Of a DNA stretch of 64,000 bases, positions 12,438 to 26,504 are shown piece after piece. The notes under the pieces are model-generated. The model saw only the letters and a program-made list of their open reading frames with translations, had not been told where the DNA came from and did no database searches. The stretch covers positions 176,364-240,363 of the IMG/VR virus record IMGVR_UViG_3300046003_007892. The stretch is one strand, 5' to 3'. Within the stretch, counting starts at the first letter, position 1. Every line of letters starts with the position of its first letter. Position numbers and translations under genes: made by a program.

Positions 12438-12938
12438 ATGCGGTATATCGATCTCATCTTGGAGAACCATCTCGACGAGTCTCCGCTCGACGATGACGTC
12501 ATCATCCACAATCCGTCTATCGCGGACATCAACAACCTCCGCACTCTAAGTGTGATGAGCCGGGAAGGCGTCCGCGCCATCCTGACGCCGACCGACATGT
12601 ATGTCTGGAACGGTCACTGGATGAGCACCCGTGAGGCCTGCCGGGTGCTCGGCCTCTCACCAGATTACGTTTGTGCTCTGCGGCTTCTCCGCAATGGCAT
12701 CGAATGGGACGTTGACCGCTTCAACAACGGGCGAACGCCCGACGCGAGGTTTGACCTTCGGGAAGAACACGGCATCATCTATCGGAACGTGACCCTGAAC
12801 CGCCTATACGGTCACGACTTCCCCATCCTGGGTGATGACGGTGGTCGGCTATTCGACATCTACGACGAAGAGGAGGGCGGCTTCGGAGTAGATTTCTTCT
12901 TCGATGACGATGACGTCCTGCGCACCGACGACGAGTAG
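12438..12938 (+). CDS. Putative virion-internal protein, NP..LR..YVW module
   Basis: Leader MRYIDLILE; HNPSIADI...VRAIL..TDMYVWNG; paralog of 13262. Confidence 0.7.
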   Translation: MRYIDLILENHLDESPLDDDVIIHNPSIADINNLRTLSVMSREGVRAILTPTDMYVWNGHWMSTREACRVLGLSPDYVCALRLLRNGIEWDVDRFNNGRTPDARFDLREEHGIIYRNVTLNRLYGHDFPILGDDGGRLFDIYDEEEGGFGVDFFFDDDDVLRTDDE

Positions 12939-12939
12939 G

Positions 12940-13236
12940 TCATTCCGATCTTAGCTTGAACTCCGCGAGGTCTCTCCGTACCCAGTCCGCTTCCCCGTGT
13001 TCGAGCCTGATGGTGACGTCATCTGCCGATACGTCCAACTTCAAATGCCATCCCCGCTTACTAGATAGCCACCACAGGCGTCCAATCACGCCCATGTCGT
13101 GAAGAAGACGAACTTGGTGGGCGTCGCAGCGATGATCTCGGTAACCATTTCCGGGATATTCGAATTCAAGTGCCCACATGACCAGCAAGGCTTGTTCGGC
13201 ATGAGTGAACTCGTTGTTCGTGAACGTCGTCGCCAT
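12940..13236 (-). CDS. Hypothetical protein
   Basis: Fills gap between the two paralogs; start MATTFTN. Confidence 0.5.
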   Translation of the reverse strand: MATTFTNNEFTHAEQALLVMWALEFEYPGNGYRDHRCDAHQVRLLHDMGVIGRLWWLSSKRGWHLKLDVSADDVTIRLEHGEADWVRRDLAEFKLRSE

Positions 13237-13252
13237 CCGAATCCTATAGGGT

Positions 13253-13258
13253 AAATAT
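13253..13258 (+). promoter_or_regulatory. Putative late promoter TAAATA
   Basis: 3 nt before ATG 13262. Confidence 0.6.
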
Positions 13259-13261
13259 GGG

Positions 13262-13777
13262 ATGCGCCGCAATATCGATCTCGCTGCAAGTCTCCTCGAA
13301 GGTATTGCCTACCAGGACCACAACTTCGTCATTCTGCAAAACCCGACCGTGGCCGAGATCAAAAGCCTGCGGGGCAAAACCATGGCACCAAACAGCAAGG
13401 ACGGCCTTCGTGCGATTTTGACTGCGACTGACCTGTTCGTCTGGAACGGATACTGGATGACCCACCACGATGCCGCCCAGGTTCTCGGCGTTGCCGAACA
13501 CGCCGACTTGCACCTCAGGGGTAAGCGGATTGACTGGGACGTGGACGCTTTCGAGGGCAACTGGGACACCGAGGGACCGATGGCGGATAGGATGCGGACC
13601 CAGCATGCCATGATCGTCACGCATCCGACGCTGCTCCGCCTATACGGCGGGTCCATCTCCGTAATGGGCACCGACTATACTGAGGGCCCGGACGCCCCGT
13701 TCGACATTTACGATTCGCATGGTGGCGGTCGCGGGTACGAGTTCTTCTACGACGAGAACGACAACCTCAAACGCTGA
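13262..13777 (+). CDS. Putative virion-internal protein, NP..LR..YVW module
   Basis: Leader MRRNIDLAASLLE; QNPTVAEI...LRAILTATDLFVWNG; paralog of 12438. Confidence 0.7.
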   Translation: MRRNIDLAASLLEGIAYQDHNFVILQNPTVAEIKSLRGKTMAPNSKDGLRAILTATDLFVWNGYWMTHHDAAQVLGVAEHADLHLRGKRIDWDVDAFEGNWDTEGPMADRMRTQHAMIVTHPTLLRLYGGSISVMGTDYTEGPDAPFDIYDSHGGGRGYEFFYDENDNLKR

Positions 13778-13778
13778 T

Positions 13779-13963
13779 TGCGACCCGGTGGGGCGCCGTC
13801 CATCTCTGCCCCGCACGCTCTGTGCCGAAGGCGAAACTTTCGGGATACGCATCCCCATCACGAGCATCACGGTTGGTTGAGCCGCCTACTGACTTGCTGG
13901 GCCGACGTCCGAGTATCCCCTCGACCGGGCGGCCACATCGCCAGCTTTCTCCACCGGGTCGCC
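13779..13963 (-). ncRNA. Candidate ~185-nt structured ncRNA of unknown class
   Basis: Perfect 12-bp terminal stem GCGACCCGGTGG/CCACCGGGTCGC (13780-13791 / 13951-13962), internal helices, cUUCGg loop on minus strand, upstream promoter placing +1 at the stem, no credible ORF. Confidence 0.6.
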
Positions 13964-13968
13964 ACTTC

Positions 13969-13997
13969 CGTATAGGGAAAAGATCGTTTTCGGTCAA
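13969..13997 (-). promoter_or_regulatory. Sigma70-type promoter for candidate ncRNA
   Basis: Minus strand TTGACC-N17-TATACG. Confidence 0.6.
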
Positions 13998-14063
13998 CGA
14001 GAAATTAGGCTCCCACTACCCCGTTGAGCTAAAATGAGGCTTCATTTTTGGAATCCTCATTGA

Positions 14064-14393
14064 ATGCTTATTGCGAAGAAACCCGCCGCGAACGACGTCG
14101 TGGCCTTCAAGCTCTCCACCAACCAGGAAGTCGTCGGCAAGATGGTCTCGCTGACCGCCGACGAGATCGTCATCGCTAAGCCGGTCGTGGTCGAACTCCA
14201 TGGTCTTCAGGGCGGTCAGGCCGGTATCGGTTTCGCTCCCTACAGCCTCGCGGCCGATGACGCCGGGCAGTTCACCTACAACCGCAACCACGTCATCTCG
14301 GAGCCGGTCCCGGCCCGTTCGGATATTGCTGCCGCATATCTGAAGGCCACTACCGGTCTTGAAATCGCCAGCGGGTCTTCCCTCCAGGTATGA
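14064..14393 (+). CDS. Conserved phage hypothetical protein, possibly Sm-like fold
   Basis: DVVAFKLSTNQEVVGK...IVIAKP...FAPY pattern; ATGA overlap with next gene. Confidence 0.6.
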   Translation: MLIAKKPAANDVVAFKLSTNQEVVGKMVSLTADEIVIAKPVVVELHGLQGGQAGIGFAPYSLAADDAGQFTYNRNHVISEPVPARSDIAAAYLKATTGLEIASGSSLQV

Positions 14394-15244
14394 CCGAACC
14401 CGTCTGGTATAATTTTGCCCGAGGAAAGTTGGGCGTAAAAGAAACACCGGGCGAAGCAAGCAACTCGCAGATTTTGGGATGGGCTAGGCACGTCGGGGTG
14501 TCGGGATATTACAGGAAAGACAGCATCCCATGGTGCGGTCTCTTCGTCGGCTATTGCATGAAGAGCAGTGGATTTGATGTCCACTCCACACTGCTGAGTG
14601 CAAGAAGCTGGGCCAACTTCGGCCGAGCCCTCGACCGCCCGACTGTCGGTGCCATCATGGTATTCACCCGAACGGGTGGTGGCCACGTCGCCTTCTACGT
14701 TTCCGAAACCGCCACGCACTATCACGTCCTCGGTGGTAACCAGCGAGATCAGGTATGTGTGACCTCGTATCCCAAGTCTCGTCTTCTGGCTATCCGCTGG
14801 CCTACGGGCACCGCCGCGCCGGTCAACTCCAATGTTGAACGCGAAGTAGAAGACGAGGACCAGGGCGACGATTTCGGGTCCGTGATCTCACGTCGAAACG
14901 GCACCATCGGCGGAACAGTCACGTCGGTGAACGCCACCGCCCCCGTAGTCGAAGGCGACGATGGTGGCGGGGGAGGCGGCGGCTCCGGCAATCCTGTCGC
15001 CCGTGTGGGCGATAGATGCACCCATAACGCCGTCATCATCCAGGGTTCTCCGACGATGATGGTAGACGGCAAAGCGGTCGCTCGCGTGGGCGACCAAGTC
15101 AACTGCCCCCAACACGGTATGACCACCATCGTGAGTCCGGCCAGCATCCACAAGGTCGATGGCCAGTCCATCGCCCACGTGGGATCGCTGACCGGATGCG
15201 GAGCCCAGGTCACCGAGGGCTCCCCAACTATGAAAGTACCCTGA
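14390..15244 (+). CDS. TIGR02594-type (NlpC/P60-like) cell-wall hydrolase fused to PAAR domain
   Basis: N-term PWCGLFVGYC, SARSW..FG, GGGHVAFYV, VLGGNQ; Gly linker; C-term VARVGD repeats with C/H Zn ligands and EGSPT. Confidence 0.85.
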   Translation: MTEPVWYNFARGKLGVKETPGEASNSQILGWARHVGVSGYYRKDSIPWCGLFVGYCMKSSGFDVHSTLLSARSWANFGRALDRPTVGAIMVFTRTGGGHVAFYVSETATHYHVLGGNQRDQVCVTSYPKSRLLAIRWPTGTAAPVNSNVEREVEDEDQGDDFGSVISRRNGTIGGTVTSVNATAPVVEGDDGGGGGGGSGNPVARVGDRCTHNAVIIQGSPTMMVDGKAVARVGDQVNCPQHGMTTIVSPASIHKVDGQSIAHVGSLTGCGAQVTEGSPTMKVP

Positions 15245-15937: not shown

Positions 15938-16930
15938 ATGCGTCAACACGTCCTGAAGGGCGAAGAAGCTTACCTGAGCCTGATGGAAGACGTCATCCAT
16001 GATGGCGTTGACCGCGACGACCGCACCGGCACGGGCACCCGTGGTCTGTTCGGCCGCCAAATTCGCTTCGATCTCAACGAGGGATTCCCTCTCCTGACCA
16101 CCAAGAAGGTCTTCCTGCGCGGCATCATCGAAGAACTGCTGTGGTTCCTTCGAGGGTCAACGAACGCCAAGGAACTCGAAGACCTGAACGTCAACATCTG
16201 GAAGTCGTGGGGAGACCCCGAGACCCGAGACCTGGGCCCCGTTTACGGCAAGCAGTGGAGGAGTTGGCAGTCCCCCATATTTCGAGACAAGAAATGGTCT
16301 GGCTTCCCTGAGCCGGTAGCGGGTCAGCCACGAGAAGAAACCGGCGAATCCTATTCGGTGTTGGATACTTTCAAAGAGGTTGACCAGATCACCGATCTCG
16401 TCACTCGCCTGAAGGCAGACCCGAACTCGCGCCGTCACATGGTCGTTGCCTGGAACCCCGGCGAGATCGATCAGATGGCCCTGCCGCCATGTCATTGCCT
16501 GTTCCAGTTCTACGTCGTGCCCCTGACCGAGGCCGAGAAGGGCGCGTGGATGTGCGCCAACGAAGCCGCCATGATCGCCGGAACAGCCGGTCCCGTTCCG
16601 ACTGGTCGCCTGTCCTGCCAACTCTATCAGAGGAGCGCGGACATCTTCCTCGGCGTTCCCTTCAACATCGCCTCCTACGCGCTTCTGACCCAGATGCTCG
16701 CTCAGCAGTGCAACTTCCTCCTCGGAGAGTTCGTCCACACCTTCGGGGACGTCCACCTCTATCACAATCACTTCGATCAAGCTCGTGAGCAACTCGCCCG
16801 CGAGATCGTCTCGAAGAAACCCCAGATGACCATTCGGAAAGCTGACGACATCTTCTCCTACCACGTCGATGACTTCGTTCTCTCCGACTACGAACCCCAC
16901 CCCACGATCAAGGCACCCGTCGCAGTATGA
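15938..16930 (+). CDS. thyA: Thymidylate synthase ThyA
   Basis: [67 protein letters not shown]. Confidence 0.97.
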
Positions 16931-17448
16931 GAATGACCATCATTGCCGCCATGGACGACAATCGTCTCATCGGCACCAACAACGATCTCCCGTGGCGCAT
17001 CCCCGCCGACCTCAAGCACTTCAAGGCGACCACCACGGGCGGCGTCATGGTCATGGGTGCCAACACCTGGAGGAGCTTCGGAGGCCGGGCTCTACCGAAG
17101 CGCATCTCGATTGTGGTCACCCGCCATCCCGAAGCCATTGAGGTCCGGGAAGAAGATCGCTGCAACGTCCTGGTCCTGTCCTGCATGGAACTCGCCCTCA
17201 CGGTGGCGAAGGCGTATGCGGCCGATCAGGGACACGAGGAATATTTCGTAATCGGTGGCGCGAACATCTATGAACAACTCATAGACCGTGCTGACCGAAT
17301 GGTCCTGACGCGCGTCCATGGCACCCACGCGGGCGACAAATACTTCCCGGAGATCGGGGACAACTGGGTCGCCGAAATCTACAACGGCCTCGAACTCGTC
17401 GAGGACAACGGCTTCACCTTTACGGTGCTTGATTACCGGAGACCCTGA
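16927..17448 (+). CDS. folA: Dihydrofolate reductase
   Basis: [46 protein letters not shown]. Confidence 0.95.

Positions 17449-24824: not shown

Positions 24825-26504
<1,680 letters not shown>

What the first reader, a model, noticed from the sequence alone, without database searches (positions are those of the whole stretch)
13779..13997. Promoter-equipped ~185-nt structured RNA antisense in an intergenic gap
Seen: on the minus strand, TTGACC-N17-TATACG puts +1 at the start of GGCGACCCGGUGG, which pairs perfectly over 12 bp with CCACCGGGUCGC about 160 nt later. Inside are GGCCGCC/GGCGGCU, a GGGAU-GCGU-AUCCC hairpin, a GCC-UUCG-GC hairpin, and a GGGAUAC/GUAUCCC complementarity that could form a pseudoknot or switch. 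No credible ORF. The length is 6S-RNA-like, but the internal helices look multibranched rather than rod-shaped, so the class is unassigned. An RNAP-sequestering role is speculation.
Basis: partly seen in the sequence, partly recalled or inferred. Interest (0 to 1): 0.7.

Follow-up and report, generated by a model that had tools for sequence, protein, structure and literature searches.

The report
Candidate small RNA in lake jumbo phage
A 286-base gap between two genes of an uncultured lake-water jumbo phage holds a good promoter with no protein gene to drive and a roughly 185-base non-coding stretch kept almost unchanged in related phages, so it is a plausible new phage small RNA, but the evidence for an elaborate fold is weak and it is not a 6S RNA.

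Summary
The window is the last 64 kb of a 240-kb IMG/VR jumbo-phage contig from lake water.

**What is confirmed.** The promoter matches the type this phage uses throughout, GTTGAC-N17-CTATAC on the minus strand. It has no co-oriented gene downstream. The 12-bp stem (13951-13962 with 13780-13791) is perfect. No frame looks coding, and relatives carry a 1-nt indel.

**What is not supported.**
- A 12-bp inverted repeat at this spacing is near chance in 59% GC DNA.
- The 159-nt interior folds no better than shuffled sequence.
- Only one 62-nt hairpin (13947 to 13886) stands out, and only on the minus strand (z -2.3, against -0.4 on plus).
- Rfam, ARAGORN, and searches for reverse transcriptase, Ro60 and recombinases give no known class. 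A 6S identity is not supported.

**Conservation.** Four diverged metagenomic relatives keep the element at the same locus. In one, 126 nt differ at 2 positions while the adjacent gene is about 15% diverged. Full sequences of these relatives could not be retrieved, so covariation is untested. No RNA-seq run was listed.

**Verdict.** This is a candidate independently transcribed minus-strand small RNA of unassigned class (confidence about 0.4). Rivals are an antisense leader, a regulatory region of the downstream Sm-like/PAAR operon, a relic of a gene duplication, and chance.

The parts
13993..13998 (-). -35 element GTTGAC of the orphan promoter
   Evidence: Read. Perfect core match in the genome-wide scan. 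Matrix rank 129 of 480,632 positions.
13970..13975 (-). -10 element CTATAC, 17 nt after the -35. Together they fit the alphaproteobacterial sigma-70 consensus CTTGAC-N17-CTATAT at 5/6 + 5/6.
   Evidence: consensus from PMC2873474. In relatives X12 and X20 it reads GTAGAC or GTAGA-. CTAGA variants occur in other promoters of this phage.
13963..13965 (-). Inferred transcription start, 5-7 nt after the -10, at the foot of the closing stem
   Evidence: Inference from promoter geometry. No transcript data were available.
13951..13962 (-). 5' arm of the 12-bp closing stem (GCGACCCGGUGG)
   Evidence: I4. No differences shared by X12 and X20 fall inside the arm, while changes flank it at 13949/50 and 13964.
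13886..13947 (-). 62-nt irregular hairpin, the only significantly folded part. It contains G-U pairs 13941-13892 and 13945-13888, which would be A-C mismatches on the plus strand.
   Evidence: minus -28.2 kcal/mol, z -2.32, 29% of the ensemble; plus z -0.44. Pair map. In X12, X19 and X20, 13892 A>G on plus turns the G-U pair into G-C.
13792..13887 (-). 96-nt stretch that is poorly folded but the best conserved part. It includes the small GGGAU-GCGU-AUCCC and GCCUUCGGC hairpins.
   Evidence: z +1.28 on minus and +0.55 on plus. X19 shows 2 differences and 1 gap over 13782-13907. No differences shared by X12 and X20 lie here.
13780..13791 (-). 3' arm of the closing stem (CCACCGGGUCGC). It starts 2 nt after the stop codon of the convergent 171-aa gene, and no terminator follows.
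   Evidence: In X19, similarity starts here; the spacer to the stop codon differs and 13781 is T.
13262..13777 (+). Gene A2, 171 aa, unknown function, convergent with the candidate RNA. It is a paralogue of A1 (12438-12938).
   Evidence: Coding GC pattern. 43% identity to A1, E 3e-35. No Pfam or PHROG match.
14064..14393 (+). 109-aa gene with a predicted Sm/LSm-like fold, divergent from the candidate RNA. Its stop overlaps the start of the PAAR-CHAP tail-spike gene (14390-15244).
   Evidence: phrog_527. Atlas look-alikes include clusters carrying PF16243 Sm_like. AF2 model pLDDT 71. Foldseek top hit 3BY7, E 1e-4, then Sm/LSm/SmAP chains.
14006..14034 (+). Weak candidate promoter of the 109-aa gene (TAGGCT-N17-CTAAAA), back to back with the minus-strand promoter
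   Evidence: Matrix score 4.3 bits. The -10-like TAAAAT/TATAAT aligns between the window and the relative L004, whose protein is 76% identical.

Best explanation
The gap holds a small non-coding RNA gene of the phage on the minus strand.

**Proposed mechanism.**
- Host sigma-70 RNA polymerase starts at about 13963-13965 from GTTGAC-N17-CTATAC (inferred).
- The first 12 nt can pair with 13791-13780, about 160 nt downstream, closing the molecule (shown as sequence, inferred as RNA).
- A stable 62-nt hairpin follows the 5' arm.
- The remaining 96 nt or so are loosely folded and are the most conserved part. I take this to be the working surface for a partner RNA or protein (inferred).
- The 3' end is not set by a canonical terminator. 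Either it is made by processing at the base of the closing stem, or transcription runs on antisense into gene A2 (unknown).

Its class is unassigned. It is not 6S RNA, tRNA, tmRNA or any Rfam family.
For: 1. Orphan promoter. It is one of 6 perfect core matches in 240 kb. This promoter type is strongly concentrated in intergenic DNA and otherwise points at genes or tRNA clusters. It ranks 129 of 480,632 positions with a matrix trained on 32 other promoters. It fits the CTTGAC-N17-CTATAT consensus (PMC2873474). The predicted start falls at the first base of the 12-bp stem.
2. No coding capacity. The frames have non-coding GC patterns. A 1-nt insertion after 13949 in X12 and X20 lies inside conserved sequence. 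There is no ORF with TAG read through either.
3. Strand asymmetry. The 62-nt hairpin gives z -2.32 on minus against -0.44 on plus. Its two G-U pairs are A-C on plus. The 13892 change in three relatives makes one of them G-C.
4. Conservation at a fixed locus. In X19, 13782-13907 has 2 differences and 1 gap, against 14-16% divergence in its A2 pieces. The switch occurs at the stop codon. In X12, alignment resumes at 13772 after 175 unalignable bases. X16 and X20 also carry the element.
5. The variants shared by X12 and X20 slightly stabilise the minus-strand fold. Only 8% of random variant sets do as well, against 26% on plus.
Against: - There is no transcript evidence; no RNA run was listed.
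- No covariation could be tested, because only difference lists of the relatives were obtainable.
- The interior is not more structured than shuffles.
- The 12-bp stem is individually within chance.
- No terminator follows.
- In X12 and X20 two of six -10 bases differ, and X12 has a deletion there.
- In X19, C13781>T keeps the second stem pair only on the plus strand unless 13961 also changed, which was not seen.
- No specific target emerged in phage translation-start regions or in 401 alphaproteobacterial genomes.
- In a more distant relative, the A2 homologue is followed by another gene and not by the element.
Confidence: 0.4

Rival explanations
1. The promoter drives a long cis-antisense transcript. 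The element is only its 5' leader, and the function is to interfere with the convergent gene A2, or to read on to the minus-strand gene B1 at 12940-13236.
For: No terminator follows the element on the minus strand. A2 ends 2 nt from the 3' arm. B1 lies further down on the same strand.
Against: An antisense promoter does not need 185 nt of conserved sequence. The A2 C-terminus opposite such a transcript is the least conserved part of the locus. B1 has its own promoter-like site directly at its start codon.
Confidence: 0.15
2. It is a plus-strand or DNA-level regulatory region of the downstream operon (Sm-like gene, PAAR-CHAP spike, and onward). On this view it is conserved together with that operon, and the minus-strand promoter is incidental.
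For: In X12 the well-conserved block runs from 13772 through the end of the 109-aa gene at 14393. Almost all genes in this part of the genome are on plus, 31 against 3 in genome 180-200 kb.
Against: The plus strand shows no significant fold anywhere. No Rfam cis-regulatory family matches. The best plus promoter lies downstream of the element at 14006-14034, so the element would not be in that 5' UTR. The last 100 nt before the gene are not conserved in L004.
Confidence: 0.17
3. It is a relic of a tandem duplication. The cassette A(+)/B(-) was duplicated, and the second B copy decayed, leaving its promoter and start region.
For: A1 and A2 are paralogues. B1 sits after A1 exactly where the element sits after A2. 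Both are preceded on the minus strand by TTT(A/T)CCCTATA and begin (A/G)TGGCGAC.
Against: Beyond that 30-nt motif there is no significant nucleotide or protein similarity between B1 and the element: score 20 against a shuffle mean of 17.9, with 53 of 300 shuffles as good. A decaying pseudogene should not be 98% identical where the neighbouring gene is about 85%.
Confidence: 0.1
4. It is a DNA element bounded by inverted repeats: a MITE-like mobile element, an invertible segment, or a protein-binding site.
For: Perfect 12-bp terminal inverted repeats enclose a conserved 159 bp. Identity is high between otherwise diverged genomes.
Against: There is a single copy in 240 kb. No other copies were found with three 20-mers and the stem pattern in IMG/VR, JGI metagenomes or GTDB genomes, only chance hits. 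There is no target-site duplication. All relatives have the same orientation and locus, and no joints were seen. No serine or tyrosine recombinase is present in the record.
Confidence: 0.05
5. It has no function: a chance promoter-like site and a chance inverted repeat in spacer DNA.
For: The stem and the internal helices are within chance.
Against: Nucleotide conservation is far above that of the flanking gene. The promoter match is good. The hairpin is strand-specific.
Confidence: 0.08
6. It is a 6S-like RNA that sequesters RNA polymerase.
For: Only the length, and the pairing of the 5' and 3' ends.
Against: No match to any Rfam 6S model at E up to 10. The predicted fold is a closing stem plus a hairpin plus a loose region, not a rod with a central bubble.
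Confidence: 0.03

Closest known systems
Phage-encoded small RNAs with their own host-type promoters, for example the stable 'species 1 and 2' RNAs of T4 and the cyanophage S-PM2 antisense RNA CfrI (from my own knowledge, not checked here)
   Same: A short non-coding transcript unit inside a large phage genome, probably read by host polymerase, with no ORF and not a tRNA.
   Different: There is no sequence or model similarity to any described family. Expression is not shown. No terminator is present.
Alphaproteobacterial trans-acting sRNAs preceded by CTTGAC-N17-CTATAT (PMC2873474)
   Same: The same promoter architecture, with 5/6 + 5/6 matches and a 17-nt spacer. The size is within the reported sRNA range. 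A poorly structured conserved stretch could act as a seed.
   Different: Those sRNAs normally end in an intrinsic terminator, which is absent here. There is no Rfam alpha-sRNA family match. No homologue or consistent complementary site was found in 401 alphaproteobacterial genomes.
6S RNA (Rfam RF00013 and related models)
   Same: The length is about 185 nt and the 5' and 3' ends pair.
   Different: There is no model match, no rod shape and no central bubble.
Sm/LSm-Hfq proteins with partner RNAs. The resemblance concerns the neighbouring gene only.
   Same: The divergently oriented neighbour has a predicted Sm/LSm-like barrel.
   Different: The Pfam Sm_like model itself does not match. The gene is coupled to a PAAR tail-spike gene here, and is again followed by a PAAR-like start in X12. 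It may therefore be a virion or assembly protein. RNA binding is untested.

Membership tests
6S RNA | Match to the Rfam covariance models for 6S RNA | tested here: not met
   No hit at gathering score on the window, and none at E up to 10 on 13600-14200.
6S RNA | Largely double-stranded rod with a central single-stranded bubble that mimics an open promoter | tested here: not met
   The MFE and centroid show a closing stem, one hairpin and a loosely folded 96 nt. The interior gives z +0.64.
6S RNA | Binds sigma-70 holoenzyme and templates product RNAs | not testable with these tools
   This needs biochemistry.
tRNA / tmRNA | Cloverleaf or tRNA-like domain detectable by ARAGORN or Rfam | tested here: not met
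   No gene in the window. Only sub-threshold hits with 160-nt 'introns' appear at relaxed settings. The phage's 24 tRNAs lie elsewhere.
Retron ncRNA (msr-msd) | Terminal inverted repeats next to a reverse transcriptase gene | tested here: not met
   The inverted repeats are present, but there is no RVT_1 match in the 240-kb record. The record is about 45% complete.
Bacterial Y RNA | Ro60/Rsr (TROVE) partner gene and a Y-RNA model match | tested here: not met
   No TROVE match and no Rfam match.
MITE or invertible DNA segment | Several copies or empty sites, a target-site duplication, or both orientations with a recombinase | tested here: not met
   Single copy. Only chance hits elsewhere. No joints were seen. 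No resolvase or integrase is present.
Independently transcribed bacterial or phage sRNA gene (generic) | Own promoter not serving a protein gene | tested here: met
Independently transcribed bacterial or phage sRNA gene (generic) | Intrinsic terminator or another defined 3' end | tested here: not met
   No terminator-like site on the minus strand downstream of 13780.
Independently transcribed bacterial or phage sRNA gene (generic) | Sequence conserved above neutral expectation, with base-pair covariation | tested here: inconclusive
   Conservation is seen in X19, X12, X20 and X16. Only a few substitutions are known: one changes G-U to G-C, one breaks a terminal A-U pair, and two lie in loops. 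No alignment could be built.
Independently transcribed bacterial or phage sRNA gene (generic) | Detectable discrete transcript | not testable with these tools
   No RNA run was listed for the stretch.

The most novel reading that the evidence does not exclude
The element and the divergently transcribed 109-aa Sm/LSm-like gene form a phage-encoded ribonucleoprotein module. The Sm-like ring would bind the conserved, loosely folded 96-nt part of the RNA. This would be a new RNA class with a dedicated viral Sm-like partner in jumbo phages. In X12, the block conserved at about 90% is the element plus this gene.
Probability: 0.07. Interest if true: 0.75.

Novelty: new member of a known kind. Interest (0 to 1): 0.38.

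Why it matters
Small RNAs of jumbo phages are almost unexplored. If this one is transcribed, it would be a conserved, promoter-equipped non-coding gene with no relative in Rfam, in a clade of freshwater and soil phages that probably infect alphaproteobacteria. It also sits next to a viral Sm-like protein, which gives a concrete pairing to test.

As the evidence stands, it is a reasonable candidate and not a demonstrated structured RNA. The claim of a rich multibranched fold and the 6S analogy should be dropped.

Tried and rejected
**Known RNA classes**
- Rfam at gathering score and at E up to 10: nothing relevant.
- Rfam on the rest of the genome: only tRNAs and one group I intron.
- ARAGORN, including intron and low-score modes: noise only.

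**Search for diverged homologues**
- blastn and tblastn against GenBank phages: none.
- Neighbour proteins in IMG/VR: only L002, which lacks the element.
- Protein searches of 5.8 billion clusters: only self, near-identical strains, and one 76% relative whose contig starts 106 nt upstream of the gene.
- JGI metagenome scans by protein pattern and by 20-mer: chance hits only.
- IMG/VR scans with the stem pattern and two 20-mers: chance hits only.
- GTDB scan with the stem pattern: more than 120 chance hits and no similarity.
- Profile search for the A1/A2 family: the nearest relative, L148, has no element after the gene.
- Read laying on same-species strains: no variation in the element.

**Other hypotheses tested**
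- Relation of the element to the 98-aa gene B1: not significant.
- TAG read-through ORFs: none credible, and TAG is a normal stop in 81 of 383 genes.
- Target prediction by duplex energy against 383 start regions: no better than shuffles.
- Similarity or complementarity in 401 alphaproteobacterial genomes: scattered chance matches only.
- Reverse transcriptase, TROVE, RtcB, resolvase and integrase in the record: none.

**Not run**
- No protein-RNA complex prediction was run, because it gives no verdict for RNA.

Full report
**Context.** The window is G000:C1:176364-240363, the last 64 kb of a 240,363-bp IMG/VR virus record that CheckV rates at about 45% complete.
- It is about 59% GC.
- It carries 24 tRNA genes outside the window, GroEL, thymidylate synthase and tail genes.
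- A 1390-aa tail protein has distant tblastn matches in PA5oct-like Pseudomonas jumbo phages and in Agrobacterium and Sinorhizobium phages.
- Public runs that hold the stretch are mostly lake-water metagenomes.
- The finding lies in a 286-nt gap (13778-14063) between two plus-strand genes, A2 (13262-13777, 171 aa) and a 109-aa gene (14064-14393).

**Observation.**
- The promoter reads best as GTTGAC (13998-13993), N17, CTATAC (13975-13970).
- GGCGACCCGGUGG begins at 13963, 7 nt after the -10.
- The arms 13951-13962 and 13780-13791 are perfectly complementary, with 159 nt between them.
- None of the frames in the gap has the coding signature of this genome. GC at codon positions 1/2/3 is about 0.60/0.41/0.75 in real genes, against 0.64/0.62/0.58, 0.60/0.57/0.56 and 0.67/0.59/0.68 in the gap.
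- Relatives carry a 1-nt insertion inside the conserved part.

**Is it more than chance?**

Promoter: yes.
- A scan for TTGAC, a spacer and CTATA with at most one mismatch finds 46 sites in the genome.
- Of these, 38 lie in the 13% that is intergenic. Nearly all point at the next gene or at a tRNA cluster.
- Many share TACTTGACAAGT.
- The site in the gap is one of six perfect matches, and the next gene in its direction is on the other strand.
- A matrix built from 32 other promoters ranks it 129th of 480,632 positions.
- The architecture is that of the alphaproteobacterial sigma-70 consensus CTTGAC-N17-CTATAT (PMC2873474). This fits the DUF4170 gene nearby and the phage relatives.

Fold: mostly no.
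- The whole 185 nt gives z -1.96 on minus and -1.86 on plus.
- Without the closing stem the 159-nt interior gives z +0.64 and +0.20.
- The stem itself is not rare. The genome has 18 perfect inverted repeats of 12 nt or more with loops up to 250 nt, against 2-9 in simulations.
- The 10+10 core of the stem turned up by chance once in IMG/VR, inside a 683-aa ORF, and more than 120 times in high-GC bacteria with no other similarity.
- One part does stand out. The 62-nt hairpin 13947 to 13886 on the minus strand has -28.2 kcal/mol, z -2.32, MFE equal to the centroid and 29% of the ensemble. The same bases on plus give z -0.44.
- The asymmetry comes from G-U pairs (13941-13892 and 13945-13888) that are A-C on plus.
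- The remaining 96 nt (13887 to 13792) fold worse than shuffles, z +1.28.

**Known classes.**
- There is no Rfam match at gathering score or at E up to 10.
- There is no tRNA or tmRNA.
- The record has no reverse transcriptase, Ro60, RtcB, resolvase or integrase.
- The element is single-copy in the record.

**Relatives.**
- Near-identical copies exist in several lake metagenomes (L003, L006, L007, L015-L017). They show no change in the element. One strain has a patch of 13 substitutions in the 109-aa gene.
- Four runs hold diverged relatives.
- X19 has a 154-nt contig whose first 27 nt are a diverged A2 C-terminus (NDNLRR, stop TAG). From 13782 to 13907 it shows 2 differences and 1 gap. X19 pieces of A2 are 14-16% diverged.
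- X12 has a 3376-nt contig. A2 is about 20-25% diverged over 13242-13596, and 13597-13771 cannot be aligned. Over 13772-14393 there are 61 differences and 6 gaps. After 14393 a PAAR-like start follows.
- X20 has a 218-nt contig covering 13792-14009, with 16 differences.
- X16 has a 383-nt contig covering 13558-13936, with 59 differences.
- Differences shared by X12 and X20 inside the element are 13892 A>G (also in X19), 13924 A>T, 13937 A>C and a T inserted after 13949.
- Outside the element they are 13964 A>C, 13972 A>C and 13975 G>C, plus a deletion of 13970 in X12.

Mapped on the minus-strand fold, these changes behave as follows.
- 13892 turns a G-U pair into G-C.
- 13924 lies in an interior loop.
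- The insertion lies in the junction next to the stem.
- 13937 breaks a terminal A-U pair.
- Together they slightly stabilise the minus fold. Only 8% of random variant sets do as well, against 26% on plus.
- No listed change falls in either arm of the stem, except C13781>T in X19. That change keeps a wobble pair only on plus unless its partner also changed, which was not seen.
- The -10 in X12 and X20 reads GTAGAC or GTAGA-. CTAGA variants occur in other promoters of the phage, so this weakens the promoter but does not abolish it.

I could not obtain the sequences of these contigs. Protein look-ups, cluster look-ups and pattern scans all failed to reach them. A covariation test was therefore not possible. 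No RNA run was listed.

**Surroundings.**
- A1 (12438-12938) and A2 are paralogues, 43% identical.
- After A1 comes a minus-strand 98-aa ORF, B1 (12940-13236). Its promoter-like TTTACCCTATAGG ends 7 nt before its ATG, so it looks leaderless.
- The element occupies the equivalent place after A2, behind TTTTCCCTATACGG, and begins GTGGCGAC where B1 begins ATGGCGAC.
- Beyond this there is no significant similarity between the two.
- In a more distant relative (sample of L004 and L148), the A2 homologue is followed by a different plus-strand gene.
- The 109-aa neighbour is predicted to fold as an Sm/LSm-like barrel (pLDDT 71). The Foldseek top hit is 3BY7 at E 1e-4, followed by many Sm, LSm and SmAP chains. 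Atlas look-alikes partly carry PF16243 Sm_like. The Pfam model itself does not match.
- Its stop overlaps the start of a PAAR-CHAP tail-spike gene. This argues for a virion or assembly role as much as for RNA binding.

**Interpretation.** The best reading is an independently transcribed minus-strand small RNA. It would have an orphan promoter, a start at the foot of a 12-bp end-to-end stem, one solid 5' hairpin, and a conserved, loosely folded 96-nt body that would be the interaction surface.
- Shown: the sequence features, the quality and orphan status of the promoter, the strand-specific hairpin, the absence of coding capacity, and conservation at a fixed locus.
- Inferred: transcription, the ends, and any function.
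- I give this 0.40.

The rivals are:
- a long antisense transcript into A2 (0.15);
- a plus-strand or DNA regulatory region of the Sm-like/PAAR operon (0.17);
- a relic of the duplicated A-B cassette (0.10);
- a DNA element bounded by inverted repeats (0.05);
- chance (0.08);
- 6S-like RNA (0.03).

**Novelty and score.** Phage-encoded small RNAs are a known kind. This would be a new, unclassified member. The claim of a rich multibranched structure is not supported and the 6S analogy fails its tests. Interest is 0.38. The most novel reading still open is an RNA paired with the viral Sm-like protein. I give it 0.07, and it would be of high interest if true.

Noticed in passing
window 12438-13777: Tandem paralogues A1 (166 aa) and A2 (171 aa) are 43% identical and have no known family. 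They are separated by a minus-strand 98-aa ORF, B1 (12940-13236), whose promoter-like CTATAG ends 7 nt before its ATG, so B1 looks leaderless. The A2 C-terminus is hypervariable between relatives.
   Followed up: partly
window 14064-14393: The 109-aa protein (phrog_527) is predicted to have an Sm/LSm-like fold (Foldseek top hit 3BY7). It is translationally coupled to a PAAR-CHAP tail-spike and lysozyme gene (14390-15244). In relative X12 it is again followed by a PAAR-like start.
   Followed up: partly
window 14177-14360: One co-occurring strain (contig L015, run X3) differs from the window by 13 substitutions, all inside this 184-nt patch of the 109-aa gene and none in the 1 kb upstream. This looks like a recombination tract.
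   Followed up: no
window 10048 and 10744, and about a dozen sites elsewhere in the genome: A recurrent promoter motif, TACTTGACAAGT followed by CTA 15 nt after the hexamer, sits directly upstream of many genes. It is probably one temporal class of promoters.
   Followed up: partly
L146:1055-1127 (genome 139655-139730): A tRNA with anticodon CTA (amber suppressor; ARAGORN labels it Pyl). TAG nevertheless ends 81 of 383 predicted genes, so there is no sign of general TAG recoding.
   Followed up: partly
L141:1306-1555 minus (genome 40906-41155): A group I intron match just at the Rfam gathering score (50.1 bits), next to the tRNA cluster.
   Followed up: no
L146:14619-15393 (genome 153219-153993): A second perfect-core promoter (TTGACG-N17-CTATAG, minus strand) is followed by about 775 nt with no convincing ORF and no Rfam match. 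A divergent promoter-like site lies on the plus strand. This is another candidate non-coding transcript.
   Followed up: partly
window 24825-26453: A phage-encoded GroEL (phrog_5725, E 2.5e-176). A thymidylate synthase gene and a DHFR gene lie at 15938-17448.
   Followed up: no
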